A stretch of 64,000 nt of DNA from positions 44,319 through 108,318 of the forward strand of contig NIVC01000154.1 in the NCBI GenBank assembly GCA_002269645.1, in the 5' to 3' direction. The stretch comes from Macrostomum lignano (lineage: Eukaryota). Under the pieces are notes generated by a model. It was given only the letters and a program-made list of their open reading frames with translations, had not been told where the DNA came from and ran no database searches. Below, one piece after another: positions 24,793 through 54,100 of this stretch. Both the position numbers and the translations under genes were made by a program. Each line of letters begins with the position of its first letter. The first letter of the stretch is position 1.

Positions 24793-26851
24793 CCATTAAA
24801 CGTCTTTCCGGCCGTGTCACCTCCTCAGCTCGTAACATCATCATCATTTTCGACGGAAGACCGACCAAGACCGACGCGGAGGCGGCTAATCGGCTTAATA
24901 AACAGTTCACGCAGCCGCGTGCTCACTGTTCGAATCCAGCCATGCGCTTCGTCCGCCGCAAAGTTGCTGCACTCCCGCGCGAAGACCCTACCCTCCTGTA
25001 TTTCTCCAAAGACAACCTGGTGCAGGCCATCAAACGCTCTAAGCCTTCGAAGGCTATCGGCCCTGACGGTATCTGTCCGCTAGTCATTAAACAGTTCGGC
25101 CCCAAAGCCATCGACGTGCTCCTCGGCCTGTTCAACCGTTCGCTGCACTACAATGAAATCCCCGCGGTTTGGAAGAAATCGCTGATCTGCCCATTAATCA
25201 AAAGTGGCAAACCTCCGGATGACGGAGCCTCCTACCGCCCGATTTCGTTCCTCTCCCCGCTGGCTAAAATCTTTAAAAAACTCCTGCTGCCCCTGCTGAC
25301 TGACGACCACCTTAAGCTCCCAGCTTGGCAGCACGGTTTCCGCCCAATGCACTCTACCACTACCGCATTGTGTCAGGTCGCCGAGCAGATCAGTACTGGT
25401 TTCTGCCAAGCCAAGCCCCCGGCGAGAACTGGCACTGCTGCTCTCGATCTGAAGGCTGCCTTTGATTGTGTGGACCACTGTGAGCTCATCACCGACGTCT
25501 TCAACTCCGACCTGCCGAACCTCATCAAAGGCTGGCTCTGCAACTACCTTCTCGGTCGTCAAGCCCGCACAATACTGCGCGACTGCAAGTCCGCCTGGCG
25601 CCAAGTTTGTATGGGAGTGCCTCAAGGTAGCGCGATCAGCTCGCTTCTTTTCGCCTTCTACGAGCTACCTGAAGGACACCCCTACGCCGGATGACCCGAA
25701 CTCCAGCCTTATCGGCTATGCCGATGACCTTACAGCGGCTGCCTCTTCCGCGTCCATATCGCGCATCCAAGAGCAACTCAACGCCTACTTAACGCGCTTG
25801 GCGCCGTTCCTCCATGCCCGCAAGCTCAAGGTCTCGGCAGCAAAATGCACCACGACGCTCTTTACTCCGGACCAACGGGAGTACGCCAGGGCCCTCGAGG
25901 TCTACTTCGACGGTTCCAGACTACTCCAGGCTCTCTATCCTAAAATCCTGGGCGTGATCTTTGATCCGAAGATGACGTTCAGCCGTCACGTCAAGGCCAC
26001 TATCGAGAAGGCCCACAAACGTAACAGCGTCCTCCGCTGCTTGGCGGGTAGCAGTTGGGGCAGCTGCAAGGAGCTGCTGCTCAACACTTACAAGGCCATT
26101 TCGCGCAGCATCCTCAACTACGCTGCTCCTGTTTGGGGACCTGTCATCTCGTCCACCTCCTGGAACGGGCTCCAGTCGGTCCAAAACGCGGCCATTCGGT
26201 GCATCACCGGCTGCATCGTCAATACCTCTGTTGCCGACCTTCACTGCGAGACCCGGATGCTCGCGGTCCAGCAGCACAACAGGCTCCTGTCTCTCCAGTT
26301 CCTCCTGGCCTCTCGCCGTCCTGAGCACCCCTGCTACCACCTTTCCGCCTGACCGGCTCCTCGCCGGCGCATGAAGCCGTCCATTTTTACCGCACCATTC
26401 TTTGACGATTCCTGGCAGCCAGTCGACGCCCCGGCGGTCCTCGACGACGCGGCAGCCTGGGACAGGGCGAGGCGAGCTCAACACTCGCTCATCGTGCTCA
26501 ATCACATCGACGGCCTACCTCCTAACCGCGTCGTCGGCCTTCGCCCCGACGTCTGCGATTCCGAGCGTTCTTTGCCGCGTCGGACCCGCTCTCTGCTCGC
26601 CCAGCTGCGCTCTGGCTTCAGTCCTATGCTTCTTAGTTACCAGCACCGGCTGAATCCTGAGACGCCTCCAAGCTGTCCTGAGTGCGACGCGGCCACGCAT
26701 GATTGCCTGCATCTTTTTAATTGCCCGGCTCACCCCACCGAGTTGGTGCCCTCTGACCTGTGGCGCAACCCTGTTGAAGTCGCTGAGTTCCTGTCGCTGC
26801 CTGTCCAGCGCGACCCTGGCGAGGGTTAAAAACAACAACAACAACAACAAA
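24793..26851 (+). mobile_element. 5'-truncated non-LTR retrotransposon (LINE) with inactivated reverse transcriptase and C-terminal Cys/His domain
   Basis: RT motifs KAIGPDGI, YRPISFLS, QHGFRP, LDLKAAFDCV, GVPQGS, YADD, LGVIFD; C-terminal AQLRSG..CPEC..H..HLFNC. A 7-nt insertion near 25662-25668 causes a frameshift; in-frame TGA at 26350-26352; (AAC)n tail after the stop at 26829. Confidence 0.93.
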
Positions 26852-29292: not shown

Positions 29293-32200
29293 TCAATCGT
29301 AGCCACTTTGCTGACTTGGCGGCGCAGCCTGGCCCATCAGCATGGCTCCCATTGGCAAACAGGAGAATAACGAAGCTGCCGTAGGTTGAATCATGCCGCC
29401 GCCGCTGCCGCTAGCAACAGCACCGGATGCGCTGCCGTAACTTGCAGTAGCACCCATTGATGCCGACTGGGCGCTTAAATCTGGCATCGGACCTTCCAGC
29501 CACTGCAACACGATTTTTATAGATACTAAGATTTTCTCATTAAAACTTTGCATAGCCATATTCGCTGCTTGGCTACTCATAGTAGGCTAAATGAATGTAA
29601 ACAATGAAGTTTAGATGAAATAAGAAAATTTTCGATAGTCAAGATTGAGAGACAGTCATTCTGTTTTAGAAAATAGATAGAAGTAGTAGAACTATACTTT
29701 CAGAATACTACCGGTTTTCACACAGGAAGGTCTTACTTCCGGTTGTCAGACCGAAAAGTCCTATTTCCGGTTGTAAGAATGAAAGGCCCTATTTCCGGTC
29801 GCCACACTGAAAGGTCCTATTTCCGGTTGTCACATCAAAAGGTCCTACGCCGGTTATCAGACTGAAAGGTGCTACTTTCGGTTGTCAGACTGAAAGGCCC
29901 TACTTCCGGATGTCACACTGAAAGGTCCTGCTTCTGGTTGTCACATTGAAAGGTGTTACTTCCGGTTGTTAAAATGAAAGCCCCTAATTCTAGTTGTCAC
30001 ACCAAAAGGTGCTACTTCCGGTTGTTAGAATGAGATGCCCTACTCCAGTTGTTAGAATGATAGGCCCTACTTCCGGTTGTCAGATAGAAAGGCCCCACTT
30101 CCGTTTGTCAGACCGAAAGGCCGTATTTCCGGTTGTCAGATTGAAAGGCTCCACTTCAGGTTGTCAGACAGAAAGGCCCCGCTTCCGGTTGTCAAAATGA
30201 AAGGCCCTACTTCTGATTGTCACACTGAAAGGTCCTACTTTTGGTTGCCATACTGAAAGGTCATACTTCCGGTTGTCACACTGTAAGTGCCACTTCCGGT
30301 TGTCAGACAGAAAGGCCCCGCTTCCGGTTGTCAAAATGAAAGGCCCTACTTCTGATTGTCAGACTGAAAGGTCCTACTTCCGGTTGTCACACTGAAAGGT
30401 CCTACTTTTGGTTGTCAGACTGAAAGGTTCTACTTCCGGTCGTAAGTCTAAAAGGTGTTTCCGGTTGTCACACTGAAAGGCTCTACTACTGGTTGTCAAA
30501 TTCGGAGACCCTACTATTGTTCTGCAGATAGTAAATAAATTAAAAACATGCACTCACGTAAACAAGTTGATGCTCAGGCTGGGCGGTGGCCATCTCAATG
30601 CTGACCTGATACTTGTGCAACAGTGCTGAGCACTGCTGAGCGCAGCTGGCCTCCAGCACAGAGTTACCCTCGGCTCTGTACAAATCGCGCATCAATGTGC
30701 TGGCCCACAATTGAACAGCTTCGTCGGGCATTTGATCGGCAAGCTGCACTGCCGTGTCGACTACATTTTTAACCTCATCGTATTGGCCAGTGGCAAAGTG
30801 AATCTGGCCGAGAACAATTAGCGAACAGGTGAGCATGCGCTTCAGGTTCTCCATGTTGGCCAGTTTCAAGCACTCGCGGATGTACACTCTGCAAGTCGAT
30901 TTCGGGTGGTGCTTTTCTGGCTAGGTCTTTGTAGTTAAATTATACAAATTATATTAAAGGAGAGAATTGAAGCACGAAGATCTTGGAGGCTGGCCCAGCA
31001 ACCGAGGATCTGGGAGGCTGGCCCAGCAACTGAGGATCTGGGAAGATGGTGGTCAGCAACTGAGGATCTGGGAAGATGGTGGTCAGCAACTGAGGATCTG
31101 GGAAGATGGTGGTCAGCAACTGAGGATCTGGGAAGATGGTGGTCAGCAACTGAGGATCTGGGAAGATGGTGGTCAGCAACTGAGGATCTGGGAAGATGGT
31201 GGTCAGCAACTGAGGATCTGGGAAGATGGTGGTCAGCAACTGAGGATCTGGGAAGATGGTGGTCAGCAACTGAGGATCTGGGAAGATGGTGGTCAGCAAC
31301 TGAGGATCTGGGAGGCTGGCCCAGCAACTGATACTCTGGGAGGCTGGCCCAGCAACTGAGGATCTGGGAGGCTGGCCCCAGCAACTGAGGATCTGGGAGG
31401 CTGGCCCCAGCAACTGAGGATTTGGGAAGCTGGCCCCAGCAACTGAGGTTCTGGGAGGCTGGCCCAGCAACTGAGGATCTGGGAGGCTGGCCCAGCAACT
31501 GAGGATCTGGGAGGCTGGCCCAGCAACTGAGGATCTGGGAGGCTGGCCCAGCAACTGAGGATCTGGGAGGCTGGCCCAGCAACTGAGGATCTGGGATGCT
31601 GGCCCAGCAACTGAGGATCTGGAAGGCTGGCCAAGCAACTGAGGATCTGGGAAGATGGTGGTGGTGGCCCAGCAACTGACACTCTGGGAGGCTGGCCCAG
31701 CAACTGACACTCTGGGAGGCTGGCCCAGCAACTGAGGATCTGGGAAGATGGTGGTGGTGGCCCAGCAACTGACACTCTGGGAGGCTGGCCCAGCAACTGA
31801 GGATCTGGGAGGCTGGCCTAGCAACTGACACTCTGGGAGATGGCACAGCAACTGAGGCTCTGGGAAGATAGAGGCTTGGCCGAACTCACTTGGCCTGGCC
31901 GAAGTCGCCTAGCATAAAGGCCAGCAGGCCCCGAACCCAGTGCCCGGCAGCCCTGAGTCCGTGCGGCGGATCCGGGTGCCGGAATTCGTCCAGCACGGAT
32001 CGGCAATCGTTCAATCGATTCTGCCTGAGCATGAGCAGGGCCAGGTTAAGTTGAACCAGGTGCAACAGATCTGAGCGAGGCCGCTCGGCCAGGGCCCGCC
32101 TGAACTGGCTCTCAGCGGCGCCGAGGCAGTTGGTGCACATGCTGTACAGGGCTAGCATCGAGCGCGTGTGTGCCGCACGACCGCGCACCGGACACAACTC

Positions 32201-35200
32201 GGACAGCCGGACACAAGCGGCCAGATCGGATAGGGCACCCGGACGGTCGCCAGACACTAATCGGCATTGGAACAGTTGCTCCTGGTTGATGCGTGGTGGG
32301 GGAGCATCCGGATTGTGAATTAATGATAGGGGTCAGTCTAATGACTGTCAAAGGCCATTCTACTGACTGTCAAAAGCCATCATTCTAATGACTGTCAAAG
32401 ACGATTTTAATGACTGTCAAAGGCAATTCTAATGACTGCCAATGACGATTCTAATGACTGTCAAAGGCCATTCTAATGACTGTCAAAGACGATTTTAATG
32501 ACTGTCAAAGGCAATTCTAATGACTGTCAATGACGATTCTAATGACTGTCAAAGGCCAATCTAATAACTGTCAAAGGCCATTCTAATGACTGTCAAAGGC
32601 CATTCTAATGACTGTCAAAGGCAATTCTAATAACTGTCAAAGTGCAATTTTAATGACTGTCAAAGGCAGTTCTAATGACTGTCAAAAGCCATCATTCTAA
32701 TGACTGTCAAAGGCGATTCTAATGACTGTCAAAGGCTATTATAATGACTGTCAAAGGCTATTCTAATGACTGTCAAAGGCCATTCTAATGACTGTCAAAG
32801 GCCATTCTAATGACTGTCAAAGGCGATTCTAATGACTGTCAAAGGCTATTATAATGACTGTCAAAGGCTATTCTAATGACTGTCAAAGGCCATTCTAATG
32901 ACTGTCAAAGGCAATTCTAATAACTGTCAAAGTGCAATTTTAATGACTGTCAAGGGCAGTTCTAATGACTGTCAAAAGCCATCATTCTAATGACTGTCAA
33001 AGGCGATTCTAATGACTGTCAAAGGCTATTATGACTGTCAAAGGCTATTATAATGACTGTCAAAGGCTATTATAATGACTGTCAAAGTGCAATTCTAATG
33101 ACTGTCAAAGGCCATCATTCTAAGGACTGTCAAAGGCGATTCTAATGATTGTCAAAAGCCATTCTAATAACTGTCAAAGGCCATTCTAATGACTGTCAAA
33201 GACGATTTTAATGACTGTCAAACGGAGATTCTAAGGGAAAAGCTAGTCACATTTTAGATAATAGGGGGCAGCTCACCTGAATGCACAGCTGCAGCGCTAG
33301 AAATAGTCTGTTACTAATATTATTATTCAGACTGGTAGTTGCGCCTCCAGTTCCGTCTGAAACTGCGCGCAGCTTCTCAAGCTGCATCAGGGCTTTGTCG
33401 GCGTAGCGTCGAACCTGCGTTGAGAAAAGCGCAAGCACGTGGGTTGAGAAACAGTTTAATACCATGTAGTTTGATTCTTTCAAAAATAAAATTTTAATCC
33501 AGGTCAACTGACTACAATGCTTTAAATTAAGTAGAGTTGGTAGCGGTTAGTACACAGATAATCCAGAGGTGCGGATCATGACGGTCAAGACCGAGGGGGG
33601 ATCCTGTCGGTCAAAACCCAGGGGTGGGTGATCCTGACGGTCAAGACCCTGGGAGGGATCCTGTCGGTCAAAACCCAGGGGTGGGGGATCCTGACGGTCA
33701 AGACCCAGGGGTGGGGGATCCTGACGGTCAAGATCCAGGAGTGGGGGATCCTGACGGTCAAGACCCTGGGGAGGGAGCCTGACGGTCAAGACCCAGGGGA
33801 GGGAGCCTGACGGTCAAGACCCAGGGGTGGGGGATCCTGACGGTCAAGACCCAGGGGTCGGGGATCCTGACGGTCAAGACCCAGGGGTCGGGGATCCTGA
33901 CGGTCAAGACCCAGGGGAGGGAGCCTGACGGTCAAGACCCAGGGGTCGGGGATCCTGACGGTCAAGACCCAGGGGAGGGAGCCTGACGGTCAAGACCCAG
34001 GGGTCGGGGATCCTGACGGTCAAGACCGAGGGGGGATCCTGTCGGTCAAAACCCAGGGGTGGGGGATCCTGACGGTCAAGACCCAGGGGTGGGGGATCCT
34101 GACGGTCAAGATCCAGGAGTGGGGGATCCTGACGGTCAAGACCCAGGAGTGGGAGCCTGACGGTCATGACCCAGGGGTGGGGGGATCCTGACGGTCAAGA
34201 CCCAGGGGTCGGGGATCCTGACGGTCAAGACCCAGGGGAGGGAGCCTGACGGTCAAGACCCAGGGGAGGGAGCCTGACGGTCAAGACCAAGGGGAGGGAG
34301 CCTGACAGTCAAGACCCAGGGGAGGGAGCCTGACAGTCAAGACCCAGGGGAGGGAGCCTGACAGTCAAGACCCAGGGAGGGAACCTGACGGTCAAGACCC
34401 AGGGAGGGAGCCTGACGGTCAAGACTTAGGGGAGGGAGCCTGACGGTCAAGACCCAGGGGGCGGATCCTGACGGTCAAGGGCAAAAGGGGGACAAGGGGT
34501 CAAGAAACAGAGGGGCACAAGGGGTCAAGAAACAGAGGGGGACAAGGGGTCAAGAAACAGAGGGGCACAAGGGGTCAAGAAACAGAGGGGCACAAGGGGT
34601 CAAGAAACAGAGGGGGACAAGGGGTCAAGAAACAGAGAGGGACAAGGGGTCAAGAAACAGAGGGGGACAAGGGGTCAAGAAACAGAGGGGGACAAGGGGT
34701 CAAGAAAAAGAGGGGGACAAGGGGTCAAGAAACAGAGGGGACAAGGGATCAAGAAACAGAGGGGGACAAGGGGTCAAGAAAAAGAGGGGGACAAGGGGTC
34801 AAGAAACAGAGAGGGACAAGGGGTCAAGACCTAAAGAGGGGGGGGGCAGATCCGAGGGCTCAAGACCTCAAAAAGATGATGTAAAACACCATACACTTCC
34901 ATCGCTAACCTTATCGTAAGTGGCCTCCTGCATGCAGTGGAGCAGAGTGAGCAGATAGGTGAGCACAGACAGCTGCTCCCTGCTAAGCCACTCCAGCTGG
35001 CCTAGAGCTTCCAGTTCTTCGGACAATTCCAAACCGGAAGACCCATCGGCCGCGGCGGAAACAGACGCGTAACCGGAAGTTGAAGCGGTCGACGAGCCGG
35101 AAGCGGCTGCGGCGACGGCAGCGGCCTCTTCTTGCATAGCCGAATAAGACTGCACAGAGCGTTGCAGCTGGCGCAGGATTGGGCGAGCCTGTTTGGCCTG

Positions 35201-38200
35201 GCCAGCCACCAGACTGTTCAACACCTGGACAGGTGGTGGGCATTTTAAAACGTTAAAGAAACCCAGAATCACGCCAGTCTGAGCTGTCACATCTCACCTC
35301 GTTCAGATCCCATCTCAGAATCACGCCAGTCTGAGCTGTCACATCTCACCTCGTTCAGATCCCATCTCAGAATCACGCCAGTCTGAGCTGTCACATCTCA
35401 CCTCGTTCAGATCCCATCTAAGAATCACGCCAGTCTGAGCTGTCACATCTCACCTCGTTCAGATCCCATCTCAGAATCACGCCAGTCTGAGCTGTCACAT
35501 CTCACCTCGTTCAGATCCCATCTAAGAATCACGTCAGGCTGAACTGTCACATCTCACCTCGTTCAGATCCCATCTCAGAATCACGTCAGGCTGAACTGTC
35601 ACATCTCAACTCGTTCAGATCCCATCTCAGAATCACGTCAGGCTGAACTGTCACATCTCACCTCGTTCAGATCCCATCTCAGAATCACGCCAGTCTGAGC
35701 TGTCACATCTCATCTCGCTCAGATCCCATCTCAGAATAGAAATCCCCACTTCCTAAATCCCTTAAACAGATCCCTATCCAAAACCCATAAACTCCATAAA
35801 TCATGGAGACAGATGACAACTGAACGCAAGCAGAGAATACCAATTAAACCCAACAGCTACCTCTACTACACACATATCGCACCTGAATGAGTAAAGAGAA
35901 AGTTCTCAACGCCTCCTGTCGTCGCGGATGCGGCATCTGGTCCACCAGCTTGGAAGCCACAGTCAGGGTGTTGTGCACCTCGGCCAGCTGCCTGTTGGCC
36001 AGCAGCGGCACGCACTTGGCCAGCAGGAAGAGGCCCCTGGCGTATTCGCTGCCGTGCTGTTGCGCGTATTGCGAACCGAGCGCCAATAGCTCGCAGGCCC
36101 GCGAGGAATCCGATGAGCTGAGGCACTGCGCCTGCTTGAGTAGGAAGCGGCCGTACCTGCGGTGGCAAATGCATTGGGATACAGTTAGAGTAGCCATGAT
36201 TGCGTATGCACTGACATTTAGTTGCTATGACCATCTATGAACTGACATTTAGTTGCTATGACCATCTATGCACTGACATTTAGTTGCTATGACCATCCAT
36301 GCAACTGACATTTAGTTGCTGTGACCATCTATACACTGACATTTAGTTGCTATGACCATCTATACACTGACATTTAGTTGCTATGACCATATATGCACTG
36401 ACATTTAGTTGCTGTGACCATTTATGCACTGACATTTAGTTGCTGTGACCATATATGGTGACCATATATGGACTGACATTTAGTTGCTATGACCATATAT
36501 GGACTGACATTTAGTTGCTATGACCATATATGGACTGACATTTAGTTGCTATGACCATATATGGACTGACATTTAGTTGCTATGACCATATATGGACTGA
36601 CATTTAGTTGCTGTGACCATATATGGACTGACATTTAGTTGCTATGACCATATATGGACTGACATTTAGTTGCTATGACCATATATGCACTGACATTTAG
36701 TTGCTATGACCATATATGGAGAGAAATTTCACTGCTAAGACTGGAATTAATATTAGCTGGCACTGAAATTGTCTTTTAAGTGATATTAGGCGGAAAGAAA
36801 CTGTCTACGGAGTGACTTGGCGAAAGCGACTGTCTATGGAGTGATTTTTGGTGAAAGAGACTCTCAAAAAGTTTATCAGTTATCACCTCAGCGCAACACA
36901 TCAAGGTCAAGTCACACTGAAACTCACCATTCAGGCAGGTGCTGGCTAAGTCTAGCAGCCTCTTCAAGCAGCTGCGGCAGTCGAAACGCCCCGCTAAGCT
37001 GCTCATTGCTTGAGTACAAATCTGACAGCAGATCAGCGGCGTGAAGGCAAGCGGCTAACAAGTCGGCTACGTCAGTTGAGCCAGTAGCAAAGAGAGAGCG
37101 CAGCTTCCAGGCGGCCTCCAGATGCTGGGCCGCCTTGTCCTGACAGGATCGGGCGGCGTGCTGCATCAGCAGGCGACCAATCTGTAGGTTGGTCCTGTCA
37201 AGGTTGACCCGGGGGGGGGGGATTGTGCACTAAATCAACTATCGCGATACGCGCTCATACACTCGCTCACACGAGAGAGCGACCCTGATAGCTTTCTAAT
37301 CGTCAAGGCATGTACATTCGCTGCGTCTTGGGGTTGGCCCAAGGACAACTCAAAGAAGGACGGGAAACTGATATTCTTAGAAAAAGCTAAGGAGCTGGTT
37401 TTCGCAGAAAAAAGTATGACGGGAAACTACGTTTCTTAGAAAAAGCTAAGGAGGCTGGCTGGTTTTCGCGAAAAAAATAGGACCGGAAACTACGTTTCTT
37501 AGAAAAAGCCAAGGAGGCTGGTTTTCGCGGAAAAAATAGGACCGGAAACTACGTTTCTTAGAAAAAGCCAAGGAGGCTGGTTTTCGCGGAAAAAAGTAGG
37601 ACGGGAAACTACGTTTCTTAGAAAAAGTAACGGAGGCTGGCTGGTTTTCGCGAAAAAAATAGGACCGGAAACTACGTTTCTTAGAAAAAGCCAAGGAGGC
37701 TGGTTTTCGCGGAAAAAAGTAGGACGGGAAACTACGTTTCTTAGAAAAAGCTGAGGCTGGTTTTCGCGGAAAAAAGTAGGACGGGAAACTACGTTTCTTA
37801 GAAAAAGCTGAGGCTGGTTTTCGCGGAAAAAATTAGGACGGGAAACTACGTTTCTTAGAAAAAGTAACGGAGGCTGGTTTTTTTGCGGAAAAAAATAAGA
37901 CGGGAAACTACGTTTCTTAGAAAAAGCTAAGGCTGGTTTTCGCGGAAAAAATTAGGACGGGAAACTACGTTTCTTAGAAAAAGTAACGGAGGCTGGTTTT
38001 CGCGGAAAAAAGTAGGACGGGGAACTACGTTTCTTAGAAAAAGCTGAGGCTGGTTTTCGCGGAAAAAATTAGGACGGGAAACTACGTTTCTTAGAAAAAG
38101 TAACGGAGGCTGGTTTTTTTGCGGAAAAAAATAAGACGGGAAACTACGTTTCTTAGAAAAAGCTAAGGCTGGTTTTCGCGGAAAAAATTAGGACGGGAAA

Positions 38201-40307
38201 CTACGTTTCTTAGAAAAAGTAACGGAGGCTGGTTTTCGCGGAAAAAAGTAGGACGGGGAACTACGTTTCTTAGAAAAAGTAACGGAGGCTGGTTTTCGCG
38301 GAGAAAAAGTAGGACGGGAAACTACGTTTCTTAGAAAAAGTAACGGAGGCTGGTTTTCGCGGAAAAAAGTAGGACGGGAAACTACGTTTCTTAGAAAAAA
38401 GTTAAGGAGGCTGGTTTTCGCCGAAAAATACACTACAGAGATAGGAACTTTTCACTTTTCATATTAAAAATATGAAAGGCAGATTCAATGTTCATATTTG
38501 ATATGTTGTGCTTTTCTTATAGCTCTATTATTATTTAATAAAAAGGTTTTCGTTCAGAAAATTAGGGTTCTAAGTCAATTTTTTTATTCTACGTACATTT
38601 CCTGTATCTAAAAATCATAAAAATACATGGCAAGCACAGCTCGACTCTTTGGTTTAAGGAATCTACTGTATCATCTGTTGTTGTTACACAGTCAGCTAAG
38701 AATGATAAATTAACATATAGAATCCTAATTTTCTGAACGAAAAGCTTATAAATATCAATAGAACTATAAGAAAGGCACAACATATCAAAAGATGAACATT
38801 ATGTCTGCCTCCTATCCAAAGCAATAAAAATTTTAATATGTTAAAATTGAAAAGCTCCTATCTCCGTAGTGAATTTTTCGGCGAAAACCAGCCTCCTTAA
38901 CTTTCTGAGTTGTCCTTGGGTTGGCCCTCATTGCTGCGAATTGCACGAAAACCTGAATAGGCTGAGAGTGATTGGCAAATATGGCAAATACTCGCAAGGC
39001 TCGGGCTCCAGAAAGGGCGGCTGGAGCCTGAGCAATAGACACTCTTGCCTATTGAGTAGCTAAAATTGAGCTAAAAAACATGAAAGATTGGCAGTGTGTT
39101 CTTACATAACCCGCTGAAAGCGTTACTGCGACAAGGATCGCTAGAGGGTCATAGTAAACAACTCACTAGCAGCGACTTTAGCGACTTTTTAACAATTAAA
39201 ACGACCGCAATGCGACGCAAAGGCGACTGTTGAGTCACGAGCGCATCACGTGGGTTTCGGAATTGCAAGAGTGGCGAAAACGTCGTTGTGCAAACGCTTA
39301 ACTTTCTACTAGCTCAGTAGACTAAATAGAGTTTTTATAAATGCGAAATGCGCTCAAGACGCAACTCGGTGATTCCACAGCGACTCGGGAGCATGAACCA
39401 GAGACGACTCTACGGCCCCATATTTATTACAGAAGCGCCCGAGAGTCGTTACAGAGTCGCAGACAATCAAACACCTCAAATTGACTTTTGGGTGACTCTT
39501 AGACGTTATCGTTTTAGAGTCGTCTAGAGTCACTTCTTTCCTATTTTACCTGTGTTATCTGCAACGACTCTGGGGCGACCCAGGTGACACAGGGACGCTT
39601 CTAGGCCTAGACGCATCTGAAGGCTGCGTACGGCTGTTCAGTCCAAGGACTGGGGAGTCGCCACAGACACCCTCAATTACCCCAGCTAATGCTGGCACCC
39701 ATTTTACAGCTGGGTGAATTGAAGCAATGCAGAGTGAAGTGTCTTGCCAAAGGACACAAATTGTTCCAGTTCCAGTGGGACCGGGAATCGAACCCCCGAC
39801 CTTCAAATCGTGAGTCTGACGCTCTGACTATTAGGCCAGAATCTAGATAGCGGGGTCTGCACAAAGTCAAAACTCAGTAAAGCCAATCTTGATAGCTCAA
39901 AACCTCACAAATTTCGAGCTTGCGAAAGAGAATCTAAATAACATAATGCGGACTTCAGAGATAGTACCGGCAAACCCCCAACCGCTAATAGTGAAACCAA
40001 TAAAAGTGCAAACCCACCAAGCCAATTGCAGATCAGTCAATTTGCAGTGCAAAGCCGCTTTTAAACAATGCAAACAGAGTTGATAATTGCCGTCAACTCT
40101 GAACCGCTCGGCCATGCCTAGCAGGGAGGCGTAGCAGGCCTCCTGATCTGCCCATTCCGAGGCGCCGTGAGCAGCCTGGCTGGTCGATGGCGCCGCCGAT
40201 GACGCCAATGCTTTGCTGCCATGATGCGAAGCCGCAGCGGATGAGACCGGTTCGACCGGCTCCTCCAGAGCGCGGGATAAAAAGGATTCTGAGTTCCAAT
40301 GACTCAT
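29293..40307 (-). CDS. MAU2: MAU2/Scc4 cohesin-loader subunit (TPR), 8 exons, 738 aa; complement(40018..40307, 36928..37194, 35883..36156, 34910..35224, 33277..33414, 31890..32281, 30558..30888, 29293..29502)
   Basis: Matches MAU2 motifs: [102 protein letters not shown]. All junctions are GT-AG with consistent phases; total 2217 nt. Confidence 0.95.
29720..30500. repeat. Degenerate 28-bp minisatellite (TGAAAGGTCCTACTTCCGGTTGTCACAC)n, MAU2 intron 7
   Basis: Tandem periodicity with many variants. Confidence 0.88.
30975..31862. repeat. 28/30-bp minisatellite (GGCCCAGCAACTGAGGATCTGGGAGGCT)n, MAU2 intron 6
   Basis: Tandem periodicity; the same family occurs at 53205-53660. Confidence 0.94.
32335..33230. 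repeat. About 22-bp minisatellite (ATTCTAATGACTGTCAAAGGCC)n, MAU2 intron 5
   Basis: Tandem periodicity. Confidence 0.93.
33575..34830. repeat. Two adjacent minisatellites (about 27-30-bp GGGATCCTGACGGTCAAGACCCAGGGG; 25-bp CAAGGGGTCAAGAAACAGAGGGGGA), MAU2 intron 4
   Basis: Tandem periodicities switch at about 34480; both units share GGTCAAGA. Confidence 0.92.
35265..35740. repeat. 52-bp minisatellite, MAU2 intron 3
   Basis: AGAATCACGCCAGTCTGAGCTGTCACATCTCACCTCGTTCAGATCCCATCTC x about 9. Confidence 0.94.
36210..36720. repeat. 31-bp minisatellite (ACTGACATTTAGTTGCTATGACCATATATGG)n, MAU2 intron 2
   Basis: About 16 tandem copies. Confidence 0.93.
37340..38918. mobile_element. Non-autonomous TIR transposon (8-bp TSD; hAT- or P-like) whose left arm is expanded into a roughly 60-bp minisatellite
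   Basis: TIR CAAGGACAACTC (37340) / GAGTTGTCCTTG (38918); TSD GGTTGGCC at 37332-37339 and 38919-38926. The right arm (38845-38905) is the inverted copy of 38397-38452; the array spans about 37385-38420. Confidence 0.82.
39597..39840 (-). mobile_element. tRNA-derived CORE-type SINE (copy 2)
   Basis: Reverse complement aligns to copy 1 (GTCAGAGCGTCAGACTCACGA..GGTTCGATT..GCAAGACACTT..CAGCTGTAAAATGGGTGCCAGC). Confidence 0.85.
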
Positions 40308-40419
40308 GGGATGGGGATCGGGGCCGGGACTGTCGAACTGGGAGACTGCAAGGCGAGCGGTGGTGGTGTGCAAGGGGGCGAATTGGTCTGACTTAAGTGC
40401 CCCCCTAAGCATGTCTTAG

Positions 40420-46900: not shown

Positions 46901-47519
46901 TTTTGCATTCTTGATCAAATAGTCAGCTGTTTTTTCTTACTTTTATGCCTTTCTGAAAAGTTATACATGTACTTGCATGGAGCAACTATAAACTATAAAT
47001 TGTACCTAGATATGTAACCTGTAAATAAATGGATAGCAATCGACTTTCATTCTATACTGAATAATAATGAAATGAATGGCTCTAAAAAGCTGCTTTATAG
47101 CAATTTGTTTCTAGTTTTAATTCGGTAATTTAACAAGCAGCTGCAACTACGATCGCTACATTCATTGATCTATATATATAGAGTTTTGATTTATAGGTAT
47201 AGATTATGCTTACAGTTCGTGTTCCTTTTGTCGATACAAGTGTACTTTTTATATTAGATGATGGGCATAGCGTACTAAATACATGCTAGTGTATTGGATG
47301 CTGCATTTTACACTGTATACAGCATGTATCAACAGAAAAAATGTAGACACGAGCTAATCAGATATTTGAGTACGTTAATTCGGCTGGATTATAAATCTAT
47401 GTACATGTACAAAAACTTCGCACATTTACAAGCTCTGTACCTATATGAAATTATCCTTTGAATGAACTGCTATCCATGTACATGTTGCTCATACAATTTC
47501 AGACGGCAAATTTAGCAAA

Positions 47520-49150
47520 ATGGAAAAGCTGCTGGTCATTCAGACAGGAGGTAAGAAATTTGAGCTCGTCGTTTAGGGCCTGTTCAAACATCAGTTGGAT
47601 GCAGGAAACCTACATTGAAAGTAGGTTTTTGAACATACTTCCTTCCTGGATCCTTTCTAAGGTGTGTCCTTTTTAAGGTCCTCGGGTCATAGGGTCTTTC
47701 AGATCATCAGGCTGGGGCCACCATCTTCCTTTATCATCAGGTTGGGGCCACCATCTTCCTTTATCATCAGGTTGGGGCCACCATCTTCCTTTATCATCAG
47801 GTTGGGGCCACCATCTTCCTTCATCATCAGGTTGGGGCCACCATCTTCCTTTATCATCAGGTTGGGGCCACCATTTTCCTTTATCATCAGGTTGGGGCCA
47901 CCATTTTCCTTTATCATCAGGTTGGGGCCACCATCTTCCTACACCATTTTCCTTCCAATCTTCATGTAGTTTGGTAACCTATTTTATAGCTAGATCAAAA
48001 CTGTCGATTCCCCAGGCACCATAGACAAATGCTATCCCAGAGCCATCGGAGGCTACGCCTTTGAGTTCGGGGACAGCGGCTATTGCCGTCAACTATTGGA
48101 GCGACAGCTCTCCGATTGGGAGTCGCGATTCGAATTTCTATCGATATTTGCCAAAGACAGTCAGGACATTTCCGACGATGACAGGTACGTCTCCGTGTGT
48201 GTGCGTGTGCATGCTCAAGAGTCAGCGGATTGGGCACGACTGCTTAACTGCCTTCTCACTGGCTGCGGTTCGACTGTCACCTTGAGCTAAGGCAGTATCT
48301 AAACTGCCCCACTAAGGTAATTGGTATAAAAAACCACGCGAACTAATTTATTGCAGAGTAAAATTGGCCGAGGTCATTAAGTCGAGCGGCAGTCGAAGGG
48401 TCCTTGTAACGCATGGCACGGACACACTGTTGGACACGGCCAGGTTTCTTCAGAGCTACCTAAAATCAGGGAGGGCACTTACATGTATATTGTCGGTATT
48501 TTCTTTATAAATAATCAACTATCCTTACCAGTTAACTGCACCAAATATGGAATCCCAGTGCATGATGAATGGAAATTGATGAGTATCAAAAGGCTCATTA
48601 AGGGATTAATCAGACTAGAAAGGCACTTCCCGTTCCGTCCCGTTCCGTCCCGTTCCGTCCCGTTCCGTCCCGTTCCGTCCCGTTCCGTCCCGTTCCGTCC
48701 CGTTCCGTCCCGTTCCGTCCCGTTCCGTCCCGTTCCGTCCCGTTCCGTCCCGTTCCGTCCCGTTCCGTCCCGTTCCGTCCCGTTCCGTCCCGTTCCGTCC
48801 CGTTCCGTCCCGTTCCGTCCCGTTCCGTTCCGAATTAGCACGACAGCTCACGCGCCTAATTCTCTACAGACTTTGACGTCGCCAGCACCGCAGCGCCAGT
48901 TGTAATTCTGACCGGCGCCAGACTGCCCGGCGCTTTCAAAGACACCGACGCCGATTTAAACATCGGCTTTGCCCTCGGCTGTCTGGCCGCCGCCAGACCC
49001 GCTGCCAGAGACCAGGCCAATGGCGGCAATCGGACAACGTTGCTCAAGCCAGGTGTTTACACCTGTATGAACCTGCGACTCATGCGACCCGACGAAGTGG
49101 TCAGGAATTTGGAAACCGGAGCGTTTGACTGGCCTGCCTGTTCCGACTAA
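47520..49150 (+). CDS. Short-chain (single-domain) bacterial-type class 1 L-asparaginase, 197 aa; join(47520..47550, 48016..48184, 48357..48469, 48870..49150)
   Basis: Spliced translation MEKLLVIQTGGTIDKCYPRAIGGYAFEFG...KDSQDISDDDR...VLVTHGTDTLLDTA...VILTGARLPGAFKDTDADLNIGFALG...PGVYTCMN...* contains the TGGT and HGTDT asparaginase motifs. AAAATGG start context; 3 GT-AG introns with consistent phases (594 nt). Confidence 0.9.
47700..47945. repeat. 30-bp minisatellite (CAGGTTGGGGCCACCATCTTCCTTTATCAT)n, asparaginase intron 1
   Basis: About 8 tandem copies. Confidence 0.93.
48628..48830. repeat. 10-bp repeat (CCCGTTCCGT)n, asparaginase intron 3
   Basis: About 20 perfect copies. Confidence 0.97.
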
Positions 49151-49434
49151 CGTGTCACAAATATCCGCATCGATGCGACCGATATTTCTAAGAAATTCGA
49201 AATCATGCAGAAGTTGTCCGTGATTGAGCACTAAGACAATCGGTGCAATAAATCACTTTTAGTTGCAAAAAATTGTTTTGACTGACAATGGTTATTGATT
49301 TGATATTATTGTACGAGTATTTATTACACCGAATTCGATTTATATACACATAACGACGATAGACGTTAAATATTACGAAAATATGTCAGGCTGTGGCCGT
49401 GTGCTGGACTGTAATTAAACTTTTGGTCTTCTTC

Positions 49435-50143
49435 GATCGGGACTCATCCGGATTCTGGGATCGGGACTCATCAGGATTCTGGAATCGGGACTCATCGGGA
49501 TTCTGGGATCGGGATTCATCAGGATTCTGGGATCGGGACTCATCAGGATTCTGGGATCGGGACTCATCAGGATTCTGGGATCGGGATTCATCAGGATTCT
49601 GGGATCGGGATTCATCAGGATTCTGGGATCGGGATTCATCAGGATTCTGGGATCGGGATTCATCAGGATTCTGGGATCGGGATTCATCAGGATTCTGGGA
49701 TCGGGATTCATCAGGATTCTGGGATCGGGATTCATCAGGATTCTGGGATCGGGATTCATCAGGATTCTGGGATCGGGATTCATCAGGATTCTGGGATCGG
49801 GATTCATCAGGATTCTGGGATCGGGACTCATCGGGATTCTGGGATCGGGATTCATCAGGATTCTGGGATCGGGACTCATCAGGATTCTGGGATCGGGACT
49901 CATCAGGATTCTGGGATCGGGATTCATCAGGATTCTGGGATCGGGATTCATCAGGATTCTGGGATCGGGATTCATCAGGATTCTGGGATCGGGATTCATC
50001 AGGATTCTGGGATCGGGATTCATCAGGATTCTGGGATCGGGACTCATCAGGATTCTGGGATCGGGACTCATCAGGATTCTGGGATCGGGACTCATCGGGA
50101 TTCTGGGATCGGGATTCATCAGGATTCTGGGATCGGGACTCAT
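49435..50143. repeat. 24-bp minisatellite (GGGATTCATCAGGATTCTGGGATC)n
   Basis: About 29 tandem copies; explains the DRDSSGFW/MNPDPRIL ORFs. Confidence 0.95.
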
Positions 50144-50248
50144 CTCGAGCTGCACACCCTCGCGCTCGTAAAAGTTGGCCATGTAGGCGGCCTTATCCTC
50201 ATCGGACATGGAGGAGGAACCGCCAGACTCTTCCTTGAGCAGTGTGTC
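50144..50248 (-). pseudogene. Fragment of protein-primed family B DNA polymerase (Polinton/Maverick/adintovirus-like)
   Basis: DTLLKEESGGSSSMSDEDKAAYMANFYEREGVQLE resembles the recalled metazoan pPolB segment TFLKxKQEASG...EDKxxYIxxYYEREGIxL that precedes KNPG..AKLxLNSxWGKF. Confidence 0.5.
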
Positions 50249-50342
50249 GGCGTCCGTGCGCACACTTTTGCTACACAGAGTCCCATGCCGACCCATTGTG
50301 CGCGATAGCAATGGTCCCTTTTGTAAAAACCGCTAGTTTAAA

Positions 50343-51116: not shown

Positions 51117-54100
51117 ATGCGACCCGCTCGAAATGAGCGAGACAACCTGGAGAGAGACATGAAGGACAGGATGACACAAATGCGGCTGAGGCTGCTGGAG
51201 GAGGTGAGGTCGGGAGTTGAAGATGCTGAGCACAGACAGTATTAAGCTGAGTACAGACAGTATTAAGCTGAGTACAGACAGTATTAAGCTGAGTACAGAC
51301 AGTATTAAGCTGAGTACAGACAGTATTGAGCTGAGTACAGACAGTATTGAGCTGAGTACAGACATTATTGAGCTGAGTACAGACAGTATTGAGCTGAGTA
51401 CAGACAGTATTGAGCTGAGTACAGACATTATTGAGCTGAGTACAGACAGTATTGAGCTGAGTACAGACAGTATTAAGCTGAGTACAGACAGTATTAAGCT
51501 GAGTACAGACAAAACTCGCACACAACCGCAGAAACTGGAAGCTGAGCGGCGGCAGAGCGCGGCATCGCCGGGAGCAGCTTCGGGCGACTCCGAGCGTCAG
51601 CTGGAGGCGGCGCGGTCTCGTCAGGCTGAGCTCCGAGACCTGCTGGATCGCGAGCGTCAGCTGTCCGAAAGGCTACGGCGCCAGGAGCTGCGGCCACCGA
51701 GGCAGCAACGACGGGACAGCGGAGACGGTGGCAGCCCGAGGCACCGACGGCGAGGAGATGAAGGGCGGGGAGGTGAGAGTTTGAGAGAGATTCAATCAGG
51801 AGATTTAAAATCCCTTGTTCAAAGCCCCATGCTGAGACAGCAAGGTTGAAGATTATTTTAGCGAATTTAGTCAGTCTTAGTGTCTGTTAGTGTCTTTCTT
51901 AGTGTCTGTCTTAGTGTCTGTTAGTGTCTGTTAGTGACTTTCTTAGTGTCTGTCTTAGTGTCTGTTAGTGTCTGTTAGTGTCTTTCTTAGTGTCTGTTAG
52001 TGTCTTTCCTAGTGTCTGTTAGTGTCTTTCTTAGTGTCTGTTAGTGTCTTTCTTAGTGTCTGTCTTAGTGTCTGTTAGTGTCTGTTAGTGTCTTTCTTAG
52101 TGTCTGTCTTAGTGTCTGTTAGTGTCTGTTAGTGTCTTTCTTAGTGTCTGTTAGTGTCTGTTAGTGTCTGTTAGTGTCTTTCTTAGTGTCTGTTAGTGTC
52201 TTTCTTAGTGTCTGTCTTAGTGTCTGTTAGTGTCTTTCTTAGTGTCTGTTAGTGTCTTTCTTAGTGTCTGTTAGTGTCTGTTAGTGTCTTTCTTAGTGTC
52301 TGTTAGTGTCTTTCAGTGTCTTTTTTAGTGTCTGTCTTAGTGTCTGTTAGTGTCTGTCTTAGTGTCTGTCTCAGTGTCTGTCTTAGTGTCTGTCTCAGTG
52401 TCTGTCTTAGTGTCTGTCTTAGTGTCTGTCTTAGTGTCTGTCTTAGTGTCTTTCTTAGTGTCTGTCTTAGTGTCTGTCTTAGTGTCTATCTCAGAGTCTG
52501 TCTCAGTGTCTGAGTTTCTGGCTTACTACTCGTATCTTTAGTATCTGTCCTAATAACTGTCTTAGTGCCATCGTAATCATCCTGCAAGTTTGAAACTCTG
52601 AAATAATATTACATCGCTATATACATACGGATTTGTTTCACTATCTTCATGAGACGAGTCTAAAACTCCAATTATACTACTTACTCGTATCAGTATCGTT
52701 AACAATCGGTAACACTATCTCACCTAAATACACATGTACAACAAATAGGCAAAATGTCTCGCAATGCACTACATACTAGCAGTAGTATTAATTAGCAGCT
52801 CGCATGCCCTTACTAAAAATGAACCATATTAAATTTAATTTTCCCTTGTCATCGATTTCTTTTTCAAAGATCGCTTCTCCAACATGATGGAGATGATGAT
52901 GATGCAGAACTCCCAGATGCACAATCTGATGCTCAACCAGATGATGGCGCGGAATACAGCGGAGCTGCAGAAGCCGCCGCCCCCGCCGCCACCTCCGCCG
53001 CCGCCGCCGCAGCCAATGTTCATGCCGATGCCAGGGTTTGAGTCTTTCATGCAGCAGCAGCAGCAGCGGCCACCGGGGACGCCTTCACGGTCGGATAGAG
53101 ATCAGCCGAAAAAGTAAGTTGCTCAGCTAAAATGCCTCTGCTGTGGTGGTGTCAATGGCTGCATCAGAAGTGACTTTCAGGGCTGGCTGACATCCCTGCC
53201 TGATCCTCAGTTGCTGTACCAACCTCCCAGATCCTCAGCTGCTGGGCCAGCCTCCCAGATCCTCAGTTGCTAGGCCAGCCTCCCAGATCCTCAGCTGCTG
53301 GGCCAGCCTCCCAGATCCTCAGTTGCTGGGCCAGCCTCCCAGATCCTCAGTTGCTGGGCCAACCTCCCAGATCCTCAGTTGCTGGGTCAGCCTCCCAGAT
53401 CCTCAGTTGCTGGGCCAGCCTCCCAGATCCTCAGTTACTGGGCCAGCCTCCCAGATCCTCAGTTACTGGGCCAGCCTCCCAGATCCTCAGTTGCTGGGCC
53501 AGCCTCCCAGAGCATCAGTTACTAGGCCAGCCTCCCAGATCCTCAGTTACTGGGCCAGCCTCCCAGATCCTCAGTTGCTGGGCCAACCTCTCAGATCCTC
53601 AGTTGCTGGGCCAGCCTCCCAGAGCATCAGTTACTGGGCCAGCCTCCCAGATCATCAGTTGGTTTTTATTCATAAACTTCAGCAACCAAGATAAATGAGG
53701 TGGAGGAATATCAGAAATTTTTCGAAGAAGATTTCACCGCAGACATTCTGCATAAATAAGCTTGACGAAGCAATTCTTTTTTCTTTGAAAAATTTCCTTG
53801 AAAAATCTATAGACCGGCTGATGCCACACCAAAGCCTGCGACACCAGCAAAGGAGTCACCGAAAGGGGCTGCGAAGGGTAAGCTATTTAAAGTCAATAAA
53901 GGTTTTTATAGATGCGGGGATTTTCACAGTGGCGTATGTCCTATCGCAATCGCGCCAATAAAAATAACGCTCCGCCAAAAATTGACGTCAGGAGCTCAAG
54001 TTTTGCCACCTCTTGGGCGTGATATCCACAAGGCCTAGGAGACAGGGGCGAACACAAAGAGACAGGGGCGAACACAAAGAGACAGGGGCGCCCACCAAGA

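What the first reader, a model, noticed from the sequence alone, without database searches (positions are those of the whole stretch)
47520..49150. Intron-containing short-chain bacterial-type L-asparaginase: candidate domesticated horizontal gene transfer
Seen: four exons, not recovered as a gene by the ORF track, splice cleanly into a 197-aa protein with TGGT and HGTDT motifs that ends right after the N-terminal catalytic domain. Known: typical class 1 asparaginases are about 320-350 aa with two domains, and animal ASPG adds ankyrin repeats. Single-domain versions of about 170 aa (e.g. Rhodospirillum rubrum RrA) are characteristically bacterial. Inference: this is a bacterial-style short asparaginase integrated in an animal genome and intronised, possibly for asparagine/glutamine catabolism or ammonia handling.
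Basis: partly seen in the sequence, partly recalled or inferred. Interest (0 to 1): 0.75.

Follow-up and report, generated by a model that had tools for sequence, protein, structure and literature searches.

The report
Flatworm short asparaginase, inherited not transferred
The four-exon gene is real and encodes a short, single-domain asparaginase of the RrA type, but it is an unannotated copy of a gene found across invertebrate animals with shared intron positions, so it is not a recent bacterial transfer into this flatworm.

Summary
On the + strand at 47520-49150, four GT-AG exons give an intact 192-202 aa protein; only the exon 3/4 junction is uncertain. It carries TGGT and HGTDT and matches Pfam Asparaginase_N (E 1.7e-14). 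Its best solved relative is the 172-aa Rhodospirillum rubrum short-chain enzyme RrA.

The window comes from the flatworm Macrostomum lignano: a neighbouring coatomer-zeta exon is 99-100% identical to that species' proteins.

The HGT reading is not supported for this lineage. Orthologues of 160-200 aa occur in sponge, molluscs, brachiopod, annelid, nemertean, trematodes, nematodes, krill, echinoderms, hemichordates, amphioxus and a tunicate.

The window's first two introns sit at exactly the same codon and phase as in Haliotis, Lineus, Diadema, Clavelina and Branchiostoma. Schistosoma shares intron 1. The gene therefore predates Bilateria.

Supporting points:
- It shares 4 of 14 trematode-specific residues (0.39 expected).
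- It has host-like GC3.
- It falls on the animal side of the animal/prokaryote split in 96-98% of NJ bootstraps.

A very old bacterial origin of the whole animal family is not excluded.

Likely function: a cytosolic L-asparagine amidohydrolase working like RrA, with Arg where RrA has Lys158. This is a new, apparently unannotated member of a known kind, of modest interest.

The parts
47498..47502 (+). Acceptor-like 'ttcag', 17 nt upstream of the ATG. It could be a spliced-leader trans-splice site or a 5'UTR intron acceptor (inferred only).
   Evidence: Sequence. The first in-frame upstream stop is at 47463, with no in-frame ATG between it and 47520.
47520..47550 (+). Exon 1 (31 nt): MEKLLVIQTG plus the first base of Gly11. 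It ends inside the TGGT motif.
   Evidence: Donor GAG|gtaaga.
47551..48015 (+). Intron 1 (465 nt, phase 1). It contains a 30-bp minisatellite of 7.9 copies at 47703-47940. The position is shared with six other animal phyla.
48016..48184 (+). Exon 2 (169 nt). It encodes Thr12, Lys15 and Tyr17 (RrA Thr16, Lys19, Tyr21) and Asp58-Ser59.
48185..48356 (+). Intron 2 (172 nt, phase 2, inside the Arg67 codon of DDDR). The position is shared with Haliotis, Lineus, Diadema, Clavelina and Branchiostoma.
48357..48484 (+). Exon 3 (128 nt). It encodes the HGTDT motif (Thr88, Asp89) and the following helix ARFLQSYLK. Its 3' end is uncertain; 48443 is the alternative donor.
   Evidence: The long form scores 6-12 bits higher than the 48443-donor model and matches ARFLASHLK in krill and AKFIQTYLK in P0001.
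48485..48869 (+). Intron 3 (385 nt, phase 1). It is lineage specific, lies in a lineage-specific loop insertion of about 13 aa, and contains a 10-bp repeat of 20.5 copies at 48628-48832.
48870..49150 (+). Exon 4 (281 nt, including the TAA stop). It encodes TGARLPGAFKDTDADLNIGFALG, a 16-aa loop insertion (PAARDQANGGNRTTLL), Arg188 (RrA Lys158) and the C-terminus.
49247..49252 (+). AATAAA polyadenylation-signal-like hexamer, 97 nt after the stop codon.

Best explanation
This is the Macrostomum lignano orthologue of a short-chain (RrA-type) class 1 L-asparaginase family that is widespread in animals. It was inherited vertically from at least the bilaterian ancestor and appears to be missing from the public M. 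lignano protein sets searched.

Shown here:
- A four-exon intact ORF of about 200 aa with no signal peptide. The N-terminus starts directly at the first beta-strand.
- All 24 residues that are invariant across the 20 sequences of alignment A1 (19 animal orthologues plus the window protein).
- Two ancestral introns.

Inferred from RrA (PMC10949315):
- The protein forms a Rossmann-like alpha/beta/alpha domain that assembles into a tetramer.
- Thr12 (RrA Thr16) attacks the amide carbon of L-asparagine to give an acyl-enzyme.
- Lys15 and Tyr17 (RrA Lys19, Tyr21), probably supplied by a neighbouring protomer, relay the proton.
- Asp58/Ser59 bind the substrate.
- Thr88-Asp89 with Arg188 (in place of RrA Lys158) activate water to release L-aspartate and ammonia.
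- The two lineage-specific insertions lie in helix-to-strand loops, on the side of the sheet away from the active site.

The likely role is cytosolic asparagine (possibly glutamine) catabolism.
For: Gene model.

Family assignment:
- Pfam PF00710, E 1.7e-14.
- The best PDB hit for the window protein is RrA 8uoo at E 3.9e-13, against 5e-5 or worse for other asparaginases.
- The animal profile matches RrA end to end (profile positions 7-165 of 167) at E 1e-38, against 3.6e-21 for the best two-domain enzyme.

Host: the coatomer-zeta exon in the same window is 99-100% identical to M. lignano proteins. Cohesin-loader exons and a reverse transcriptase lie on the same contig.

Distribution: named orthologues of 158-198 aa occur in Porifera, Mollusca, Brachiopoda, Annelida, Nemertea, Platyhelminthes, Nematoda, Arthropoda, Echinodermata, Hemichordata, Cephalochordata and Tunicata.

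Introns:
- Exact spliced mapping shows intron 1 (phase 1, second Gly codon of TGGT) in Haliotis, Lineus, Diadema, Schistosoma, Clavelina, Branchiostoma and the window.
- Intron 2 (phase 2, Arg codon of D-R) is in all of these except Schistosoma.
- With about 500 possible sites, two exact coincidences by chance are of order 1e-5 (my estimate).

Flatworm affinity: the window shares 4 of 14 residues that are trematode specific and rare elsewhere, against 0.39 expected.

Tree: the window lies on the animal side of the best animal/prokaryote split in 96-98% of NJ bootstraps.

Composition: CDS GC3 is 0.62, against 0.57-0.75 for neighbouring host exons.

Conservation: the window protein keeps all 24 invariant columns of alignment A1, including the catalytic residues.

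Annotation: no M. lignano protein appears among the hits, although M. lignano proteins are in that database.
Against: - No transcript evidence could be consulted, so expression and the exon 3/4 junction (weak donor CAT|gtatat) are unverified.
- The exact sister of the window protein is unresolved. In NJ bootstraps it pairs with a Bacteroidota sequence (P0022, on a contig with PorP_SprF) in about 35% of replicates. Otherwise it pairs with Mesorhabditis, krill or trematodes.
- Mean identity to animals (44%) barely exceeds identity to prokaryotes (43%; Mann-Whitney p = 0.04).
- The catalytic Lys158 of RrA is Arg here and in at least 90% of animal orthologues. No enzyme of this Arg type has been assayed to my knowledge, so asparaginase activity is inferred.
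Confidence: 0.85

Rival explanations
1. Lineage-specific HGT. A bacterial short-chain asparaginase was transferred into the Macrostomum lineage and later acquired introns.
For: The family is abundant in bacteria, including the many Bacteroidota hits. PMC10949315 reports it in about 7% of bacterial species. A Bacteroidota protein (P0022) is the NJ sister in about 35% of bootstraps. Identity to prokaryotes is nearly as high as to animals.
Against: - Two of the three introns are at exactly the positions and phases found in five or six other animal phyla.
- Orthologues are present in 12 animal phyla, including other flatworms.
- The window shares derived trematode residues.
- GC3 is host-like.
- The best database hit of any origin is only 42-47% identical, so no recent donor is visible.
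Confidence: 0.03
2. Ancient HGT of the whole family. A bacterial scASNase, possibly from a Bacteroidota/Ignavibacteria-like (FCB group) donor, entered an early eukaryote or the metazoan stem lineage. It gained the two introns before the bilaterian ancestor and has been inherited vertically since. The window gene would then be a descendant of a very old transfer.
For: - Animal-to-prokaryote identity (43-50%) is about equal to identity between animal phyla (44-52%).
- The eukaryotic distribution seen here is patchy: animals plus the dinoflagellates Yihiella and Cladocopium. No vertebrate or insect appears among the best hits.
- The sponge Oscarella gene is intronless.
- The family paper infers frequent HGT among bacteria.
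Against: - No rooted, supported tree exists. With RrA as outgroup the NJ topology is uninformative.
- Only the 120 best hits of each search were listed, so absence from fungi, plants, cnidarians or choanoflagellates is not established.
- Equal identities can also reflect strong constraint on a small enzyme.
Confidence: 0.3
3. Unexpressed relic or pseudogene. The ORF is intact by chance or only recently silenced, which would explain why it is missing from annotations.
For: No M. lignano protein matches it in the databases. The third donor is weak (CAT|gtatat) and minisatellites fill introns 1 and 3.
Against: - The frame is intact over four exons with canonical splice sites.
- All 24 invariant family residues and all catalytic positions are retained.
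- An AATAAA lies 97 nt after the stop.
- 39% of the window is tandem repeat, and minisatellites also lie among the MAU2/SCC4 and coatomer-zeta exons, so their presence in introns is not a sign of decay.
Confidence: 0.08

Closest known systems
RrA, the Rhodospirillum rubrum short-chain L-asparaginase (PDB 8UOO and related entries; PMC10949315)
   Same: [quoted passage not shown] It is the best solved relative. Thr16, Lys19, Tyr21, Asp57/Ser58, Thr87 and Asp88 are conserved as Thr12, Lys15, Tyr17, Asp58/Ser59, Thr88 and Asp89. Neither has a signal peptide.
   Different: - The alignment is only about 30-35% identical by eye.
- RrA Lys158 is Arg188 here, and RrA Asn26 is Gly.
- The hairpin after Tyr reads PRAIGGYAFEFGD, not RLEENGLVVGD.
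- There are two extra loop insertions of about 13 and 16 aa.
- The gene has three spliceosomal introns and sits in an animal genome.
Animal 'L-asparaginase N-terminal domain-containing' proteins, e.g. Fasciolopsis buski P0004, Schistosoma P0007, Haliotis P0013, Lineus P0010, Branchiostoma P0207
   Same: The same orthogroup. Identity is 41-51% in the alignment. They share 24 invariant residues, Arg at the RrA-158 position, and introns 1 and 2. The C-x-PG-x-FK-x-TDAD style residues are shared with trematodes.
   Different: - The window protein is about 30 aa longer because of two loop insertions. These are otherwise seen only in two unidentified TARA Oceans scaffolds (P0001/P0015).
- It has its own third intron.
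- It is the most divergent animal member together with Mesorhabditis.
Bacteroidota/Ignavibacteria 'asparaginase domain-containing proteins' of about 161 aa (e.g. P0028, P0042, P0222)
   Same: Same length class and motifs, 37-39% BLAST identity, and the same K/R-R-N-x-E-T-G C-terminal motif.
   Different: They are intronless genes in dense bacterial operon contexts. The few discriminating columns (3 of 3) favour the animal state in the window protein.
Typical two-domain class 1 L-asparaginases (E. coli AnsA/AnsB, Pyrococcus 1WLS) and animal ASPG
   Same: Homologous N-terminal catalytic domain with the TGGT and HGTDT motifs.
   Different: The window protein has no C-terminal domain and no ankyrin repeats. 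NCBIfam type I and type II models score 36 and 28 bits, against cut-offs of 260 and 314.

Membership tests
Short-chain class 1 L-asparaginases (scASNase, prototype RrA) | [quoted passage not shown] | tested here: met
   The product is 192-202 aa. PF00710 covers residues 3-151. The stop follows the family's C-terminal motif. No Pfam domain is encoded in the + frames of the next 2.7 kb.
Short-chain class 1 L-asparaginases (scASNase, prototype RrA) | Occupies sequence space nearer to RrA than to two-domain class 1 enzymes. | tested here: met
   The window protein scores E 3.9e-13 against RrA and 5e-5 or worse against the others. The animal profile scores 1e-38 over the full length against RrA and 3.6e-21 against the best two-domain enzyme.
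Short-chain class 1 L-asparaginases (scASNase, prototype RrA) | The catalytic Thr16, Tyr21, Thr87 and Asp88, and the scASNase-specific Lys19. | tested here: met
   Thr12, Tyr17, Thr88, Asp89 and Lys15 align to them and are invariant in animals. Their roles are taken from PMC10949315.
Short-chain class 1 L-asparaginases (scASNase, prototype RrA) | Lys at RrA position 158. The family paper lists it as catalytic but says it is only moderately conserved. | tested here: inconclusive
   The position is Arg188 in the window and Arg in at least 90% of animal orthologues. The paper states that Lys158 is only moderately conserved among scASNases.
Short-chain class 1 L-asparaginases (scASNase, prototype RrA) | A homotetramer with active sites completed across dimers, and measurable L-Asn hydrolysis. 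| not testable with these tools
   This needs a recombinant protein.
Metazoan scASNase orthogroup (vertical inheritance) | A phase-1 intron inside the second Gly codon of TGGT. | tested here: met
   The position and phase are identical in the window, Haliotis, Lineus, Diadema, Schistosoma, Clavelina and Branchiostoma.
Metazoan scASNase orthogroup (vertical inheritance) | A phase-2 intron inside the Arg codon of the D-(D/E)-D-R motif. | tested here: met
   It is identical in the window, Haliotis, Lineus, Diadema, Clavelina and Branchiostoma.
Metazoan scASNase orthogroup (vertical inheritance) | Groups with animal rather than prokaryotic sequences in a tree. | tested here: met
   The window is on the animal side of the best animal/prokaryote split in 96-98% of NJ bootstraps. 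The immediate sister is unresolved. NJ on 163 columns is a weak method.
Typical two-domain class 1 asparaginase (AnsA/AnsB) and animal ASPG | A C-terminal asparaginase domain (plus ankyrin repeats in ASPG). | tested here: not met
   The protein ends after the N-terminal domain. TIGR00519 and TIGR00520 score 36 and 28 bits against cut-offs of 260 and 314. Nothing is encoded downstream.
Recent bacterium-to-animal HGT | Absent from related animals; only lineage-specific introns; nested in a bacterial clade; foreign base composition. | tested here: not met
   The gene is present in 12 animal phyla. Two introns are shared. There is no supported bacterial nesting. GC3 of 0.62 is host-like.

The most novel reading that the evidence does not exclude
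The whole animal (and dinoflagellate) short-chain asparaginase family could descend from one or a few very ancient transfers from FCB-group-like bacteria. In that case it was intronised before the bilaterian ancestor and then lost repeatedly; no vertebrate or insect appears among the best hits seen here.

Independently of origin, eukaryotic scASNases, all with Arg in place of the catalytic Lys158, appear undescribed. The founding paper of the family surveyed microbial genomes only, and I found no mention of them in the searchable literature.
Probability: 0.3. Interest if true: 0.45.

Novelty: new member of a known kind. Interest (0 to 1): 0.27.

Why it matters
For the scan, this removes an apparent animal HGT candidate. 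The gene is an ordinary, vertically inherited metabolic enzyme that annotation pipelines missed in a genome where 39% of this window is tandem repeat.

For asparaginase biology there is a modest point. The short-chain RrA-type family was described in 2024 from microbial genomes only. It also exists across invertebrate animals, from sponge to amphioxus, with conserved introns and a Lys-to-Arg change at a catalytic position. These proteins are auto-annotated in databases, but I found no discussion of them in the searchable literature.

An assay of one animal member would show whether an Arg-type scASNase is active. That matters for the proposed catalytic mechanism and for the interest in small asparaginases as therapeutic scaffolds.

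Tried and rejected
The organism was identified from the coatomer-zeta exon instead.
No 3D model was obtained, so the loop placement of the insertions is inferred from the alignment to RrA.
It was redone with stops masked and repeats collapsed, and gave no hit.
- NJ trees with Kimura distance on 163 columns gave only 7-25% support for an exact window + trematode clade, with the sister taxon unstable.
- Rooting with RrA gave no reciprocal monophyly of animals and prokaryotes and was uninformative. Only the coarser split test was informative. No ML program was available.
- The short exon-3 model (donor 48443, 183 aa) was rejected. It deletes the conserved helix after HGTDT and scores 6-12 bits lower.
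- I considered whether the 16-aa insertion in exon 4 is a missed intron. It has no GT at its start, and a similar insertion (GN(R/K)(T/S)xL) exists in the intronless P0001.
- Contamination was rejected. The gene has spliceosomal introns with minisatellites and lies on the same contig as the M. lignano coatomer-zeta gene and the cohesin-loader (MAU2/SCC4-like) exons.
- Literature searches for eukaryotic or metazoan short-chain asparaginases, and for HGT of asparaginase in flatworms, found nothing relevant.
- Rfam and tRNA scans of the window found nothing.
Full report
**1. What is in the sequence**

On the + strand, an ATG at 47520 opens a 31-nt exon that ends inside the TGGT motif. Three further exons follow: 48016-48184, 48357-48484 and 48870-49150. 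All introns are GT-AG.

The spliced frame is open for 202 aa and ends in TAA. The first two junctions are unambiguous.

For the third junction, five other in-frame GT-AG pairs exist, giving products of 178-199 aa. A profile built from 27 animal orthologues prefers every model that keeps the long exon 3 (181-187 bits) over the short ones (175 and 163 bits). The retained ARFLQSYLK helix matches ARFLASHLK in krill and AKFIQTYLK in P0001. I use the 202-aa model because its acceptor (ttctctacag|A) is the best. The true length could be 192-202 aa.

The first in-frame stop upstream is at 47463, with no intervening in-frame ATG. An acceptor-like ttcag lies 17 nt before the ATG, and an AATAAA lies 97 nt after the stop. 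Introns 1 and 3 carry a 30-bp and a 10-bp tandem array. There is one copy in the window.

**2. What the protein is**

Pfam Asparaginase N-terminal (PF00710) matches at E 1.7e-14. NCBIfam models for two-domain type I and type II enzymes score far below their cut-offs.

Among solved structures the best match is 8uoo and its mutants (E 3.9e-13). This is the 172-aa Rhodospirillum rubrum enzyme RrA, ahead of all other asparaginases (5e-5 or worse).

A profile of 20 animal sequences matches RrA from end to end (profile positions 7-165 of 167) at E 1e-38. The best two-domain enzyme scores 3.6e-21.

RrA is the prototype of the short-chain asparaginases (scASNases). Its critical residues are Thr16, Tyr21, Thr87, Asp88 and Lys158, plus the family-specific Lys19 (PMC10949315). 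The alignments place Thr12, Lys15, Tyr17, Asp58/Ser59, Thr88 and Asp89 of the window protein on these positions. Arg188 falls on Lys158. The paper itself notes that Lys158 is only moderately conserved in the family.

The protein ends 8 residues after the conserved R-N-x-E-T-G-x-F motif, where all homologues end. The three + frames of the following 2.7 kb contain no Pfam domain. The short-chain, single-domain reading is therefore confirmed.

**3. Whose genome it is**

A long exon at 8837-10390 (-) encodes coatomer subunit zeta. It is 99-100% identical to Macrostomum lignano proteins; the next best species are at about 61%.

The window also holds cohesin-loader (MAU2/SCC4) exons and a reverse transcriptase. 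39% of it is tandem repeat.

The host is therefore a free-living flatworm. The gene's spliceosomal introns, and its linkage to host genes on the same contig, exclude contamination.

No M. lignano protein appeared among the asparaginase hits, although M. lignano proteomes are in that database. The gene therefore seems to be unannotated.

**4. Is it a horizontal transfer?**

The single-sequence search returned 1565 relatives. The best named ones are animals: Pecten, five trematodes, Owenia, Lineus, krill, Haliotis, Mesorhabditis, sea urchins, Clavelina, Plectus, Mytilus, Lottia, Biomphalaria, Amphiura and Glandiceps.

The profile search added Lingula, three Branchiostoma species, oysters, scallops, Antedon, Acanthaster, Ptychodera, Lytechinus and the sponge Oscarella. 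That makes twelve phyla, all with proteins of 158-198 aa. Dinoflagellates (Yihiella, Cladocopium) have it too.

I fetched nine animal loci and mapped the annotated proteins exactly onto the DNA.

- The window's intron 1 (phase 1, inside the second Gly codon of TGGT) is at the identical place in Haliotis, Lineus, Diadema, Schistosoma, Clavelina and Branchiostoma.
- Intron 2 (phase 2, inside the Arg codon of D-D-D-R) is identical in all of these except Schistosoma.
- Owenia and Oscarella are intronless.
- Intron 3 of the window is unique and lies in a lineage-specific insertion.

With roughly 500 possible positions, two exact coincidences are of order 1e-5 by chance (my estimate; a proto-splice-site bias would raise it, but not enough). 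Two introns shared by spiralians and deuterostomes mean the intron-bearing gene existed in the bilaterian ancestor.

Further tests point the same way:

- Of 14 residues shared by at least 4 of 5 trematodes and rare elsewhere, the window has 4, against 0.39 expected.
- All 3 columns that discriminate animals from prokaryotes show the animal state.
- CDS GC3 is 0.62, within the 0.57-0.75 of neighbouring host exons.
- In NJ bootstraps the window is on the animal side of the best animal/prokaryote split in 96-98% of replicates.

Weak points remain.

- The immediate sister is unstable. It is a Bacteroidota protein (P0022, on a contig with PorP_SprF) in about 35% of replicates, and otherwise Mesorhabditis, krill or trematodes.
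- The RrA-rooted test was uninformative.
- Mean identity to animals (44%) hardly exceeds that to prokaryotes (43%).

The last point holds for all animal members, whose identity to each other (44-52%) is about the same as to FCB-group bacteria (43-50%). So the family is either strongly constrained or entered eukaryotes anciently. A pre-bilaterian transfer cannot be excluded. A Macrostomum-specific one can.

**5. How it most likely works**

The gene structure, the conserved residues and the homology to RrA are shown here. The rest is inferred from RrA (PMC10949315). It is a cytosolic enzyme with no leader peptide, probably tetrameric.

- Thr12 forms an acyl-enzyme with L-asparagine.
- Lys15 and Tyr17, probably from a neighbouring protomer, assist proton transfer.
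- Asp58/Ser59 hold the substrate.
- Thr88-Asp89-Arg188 activate the hydrolytic water, releasing aspartate and ammonia.

The two insertions (about 13 aa after ARFLQSYLK, and 16 aa at PAARDQANGGNRTTLL) fall between a helix and the next strand in the RrA alignment. That is the face opposite the active site, so they need not disturb catalysis. Comparable insertions occur in two AT-rich, intronless, eukaryote-like TARA Oceans scaffolds (P0001/P0015).

Whether an Arg at position 188 supports turnover is untested. RrA has millimolar affinity for Asn according to its paper. The physiological role may therefore be bulk asparagine catabolism rather than scavenging.

**6. Comparison with what is known, and novelty**

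The gene is a member of the scASNase family. Four of the five sequence-level criteria are met, and Lys158 is replaced by Arg. More narrowly, it belongs to the animal orthogroup that databases label 'L-asparaginase N-terminal domain-containing protein'. It is not a two-domain AnsA/AnsB-type enzyme, nor an ASPG.

The founding paper surveyed microbial genomes only and never mentions eukaryotes. My literature searches found no description of metazoan scASNases.

The specific finding is thus a new, unannotated member of a known kind. The broader observation is a small addition rather than a surprise: the family spans Metazoa with conserved introns and an Arg at a catalytic site.

**7. Verdict**

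- Interest is low to moderate.

Noticed in passing
window 1-64000: The window is from Macrostomum lignano (coatomer-zeta exon 99-100% identical). It is extremely rich in minisatellites: 83 TRF arrays cover 39% of the sequence, many inside introns and some keeping long ORFs open artificially.
   Followed up: partly
window 21422-22144 (+): An ORF with at least 12 copies of KR-AMRLMRLG-KR separated by acidic spacers. This is the layout of a neuropeptide precursor that would yield amidated AMRLMRL peptides. There is no Pfam hit.
   Followed up: partly
window 8837-10390 (-): The coatomer subunit zeta gene (PF01217). Its first 155 codons are in one exon, and the mechanical ORF then runs on through a minisatellite at about 8.8-9.8 kb, which is probably intronic.
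   Followed up: partly
window 30540-40412 (-): Exons of a cohesin-loading factor (MAU2/SCC4, PF10345), with a large minisatellite between exons at 30935-31851.
   Followed up: partly
window 24942-26829 (+): A non-LTR retrotransposon reverse transcriptase (PF00078), split over three overlapping ORFs in different frames. It is probably a frameshifted, dead copy.
   Followed up: partly
window 30935-31851 (-) and 53267-53698 (+): The same minisatellite, translating as [28 protein letters not shown], occurs twice in opposite orientation about 21 kb apart.
   Followed up: no
window 49415-50311 (-): Immediately downstream of the asparaginase gene, a minus-strand ORF starts at about 50297 (MGRHGTLCSKSVRTDADTLLKEESGG...). 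It continues in frame through the 24-bp minisatellite at 49435-50144. There is no Pfam hit. It is unclear whether this is the first exon of a convergent gene.
   Followed up: partly
L001 864-1523 and L012 287-871 (TARA Oceans metagenome scaffolds): The closest database relatives by E-value (P0001, P0015; P0001 is 42% identical and P0015 39%). They are intronless genes on AT-rich scaffolds; L001 has 860 bp of ORF-free upstream DNA. They carry loop insertions at the same two places as the window protein (GN(R/K)(T/S)xL). The source organism is unknown.
   Followed up: partly
alignment A1, position Arg188 of the window protein: At least 90% of animal short-chain asparaginases have Arg where RrA has the catalytic Lys158. 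No enzyme of this type appears to have been assayed.
   Followed up: partly
P0303 (Cladocopium goreaui, 421 aa), same 90% cluster as P0025 (181 aa): A dinoflagellate gene model more than twice the length of the short asparaginase in the same cluster. It is either a fusion or an over-extended model.
   Followed up: no
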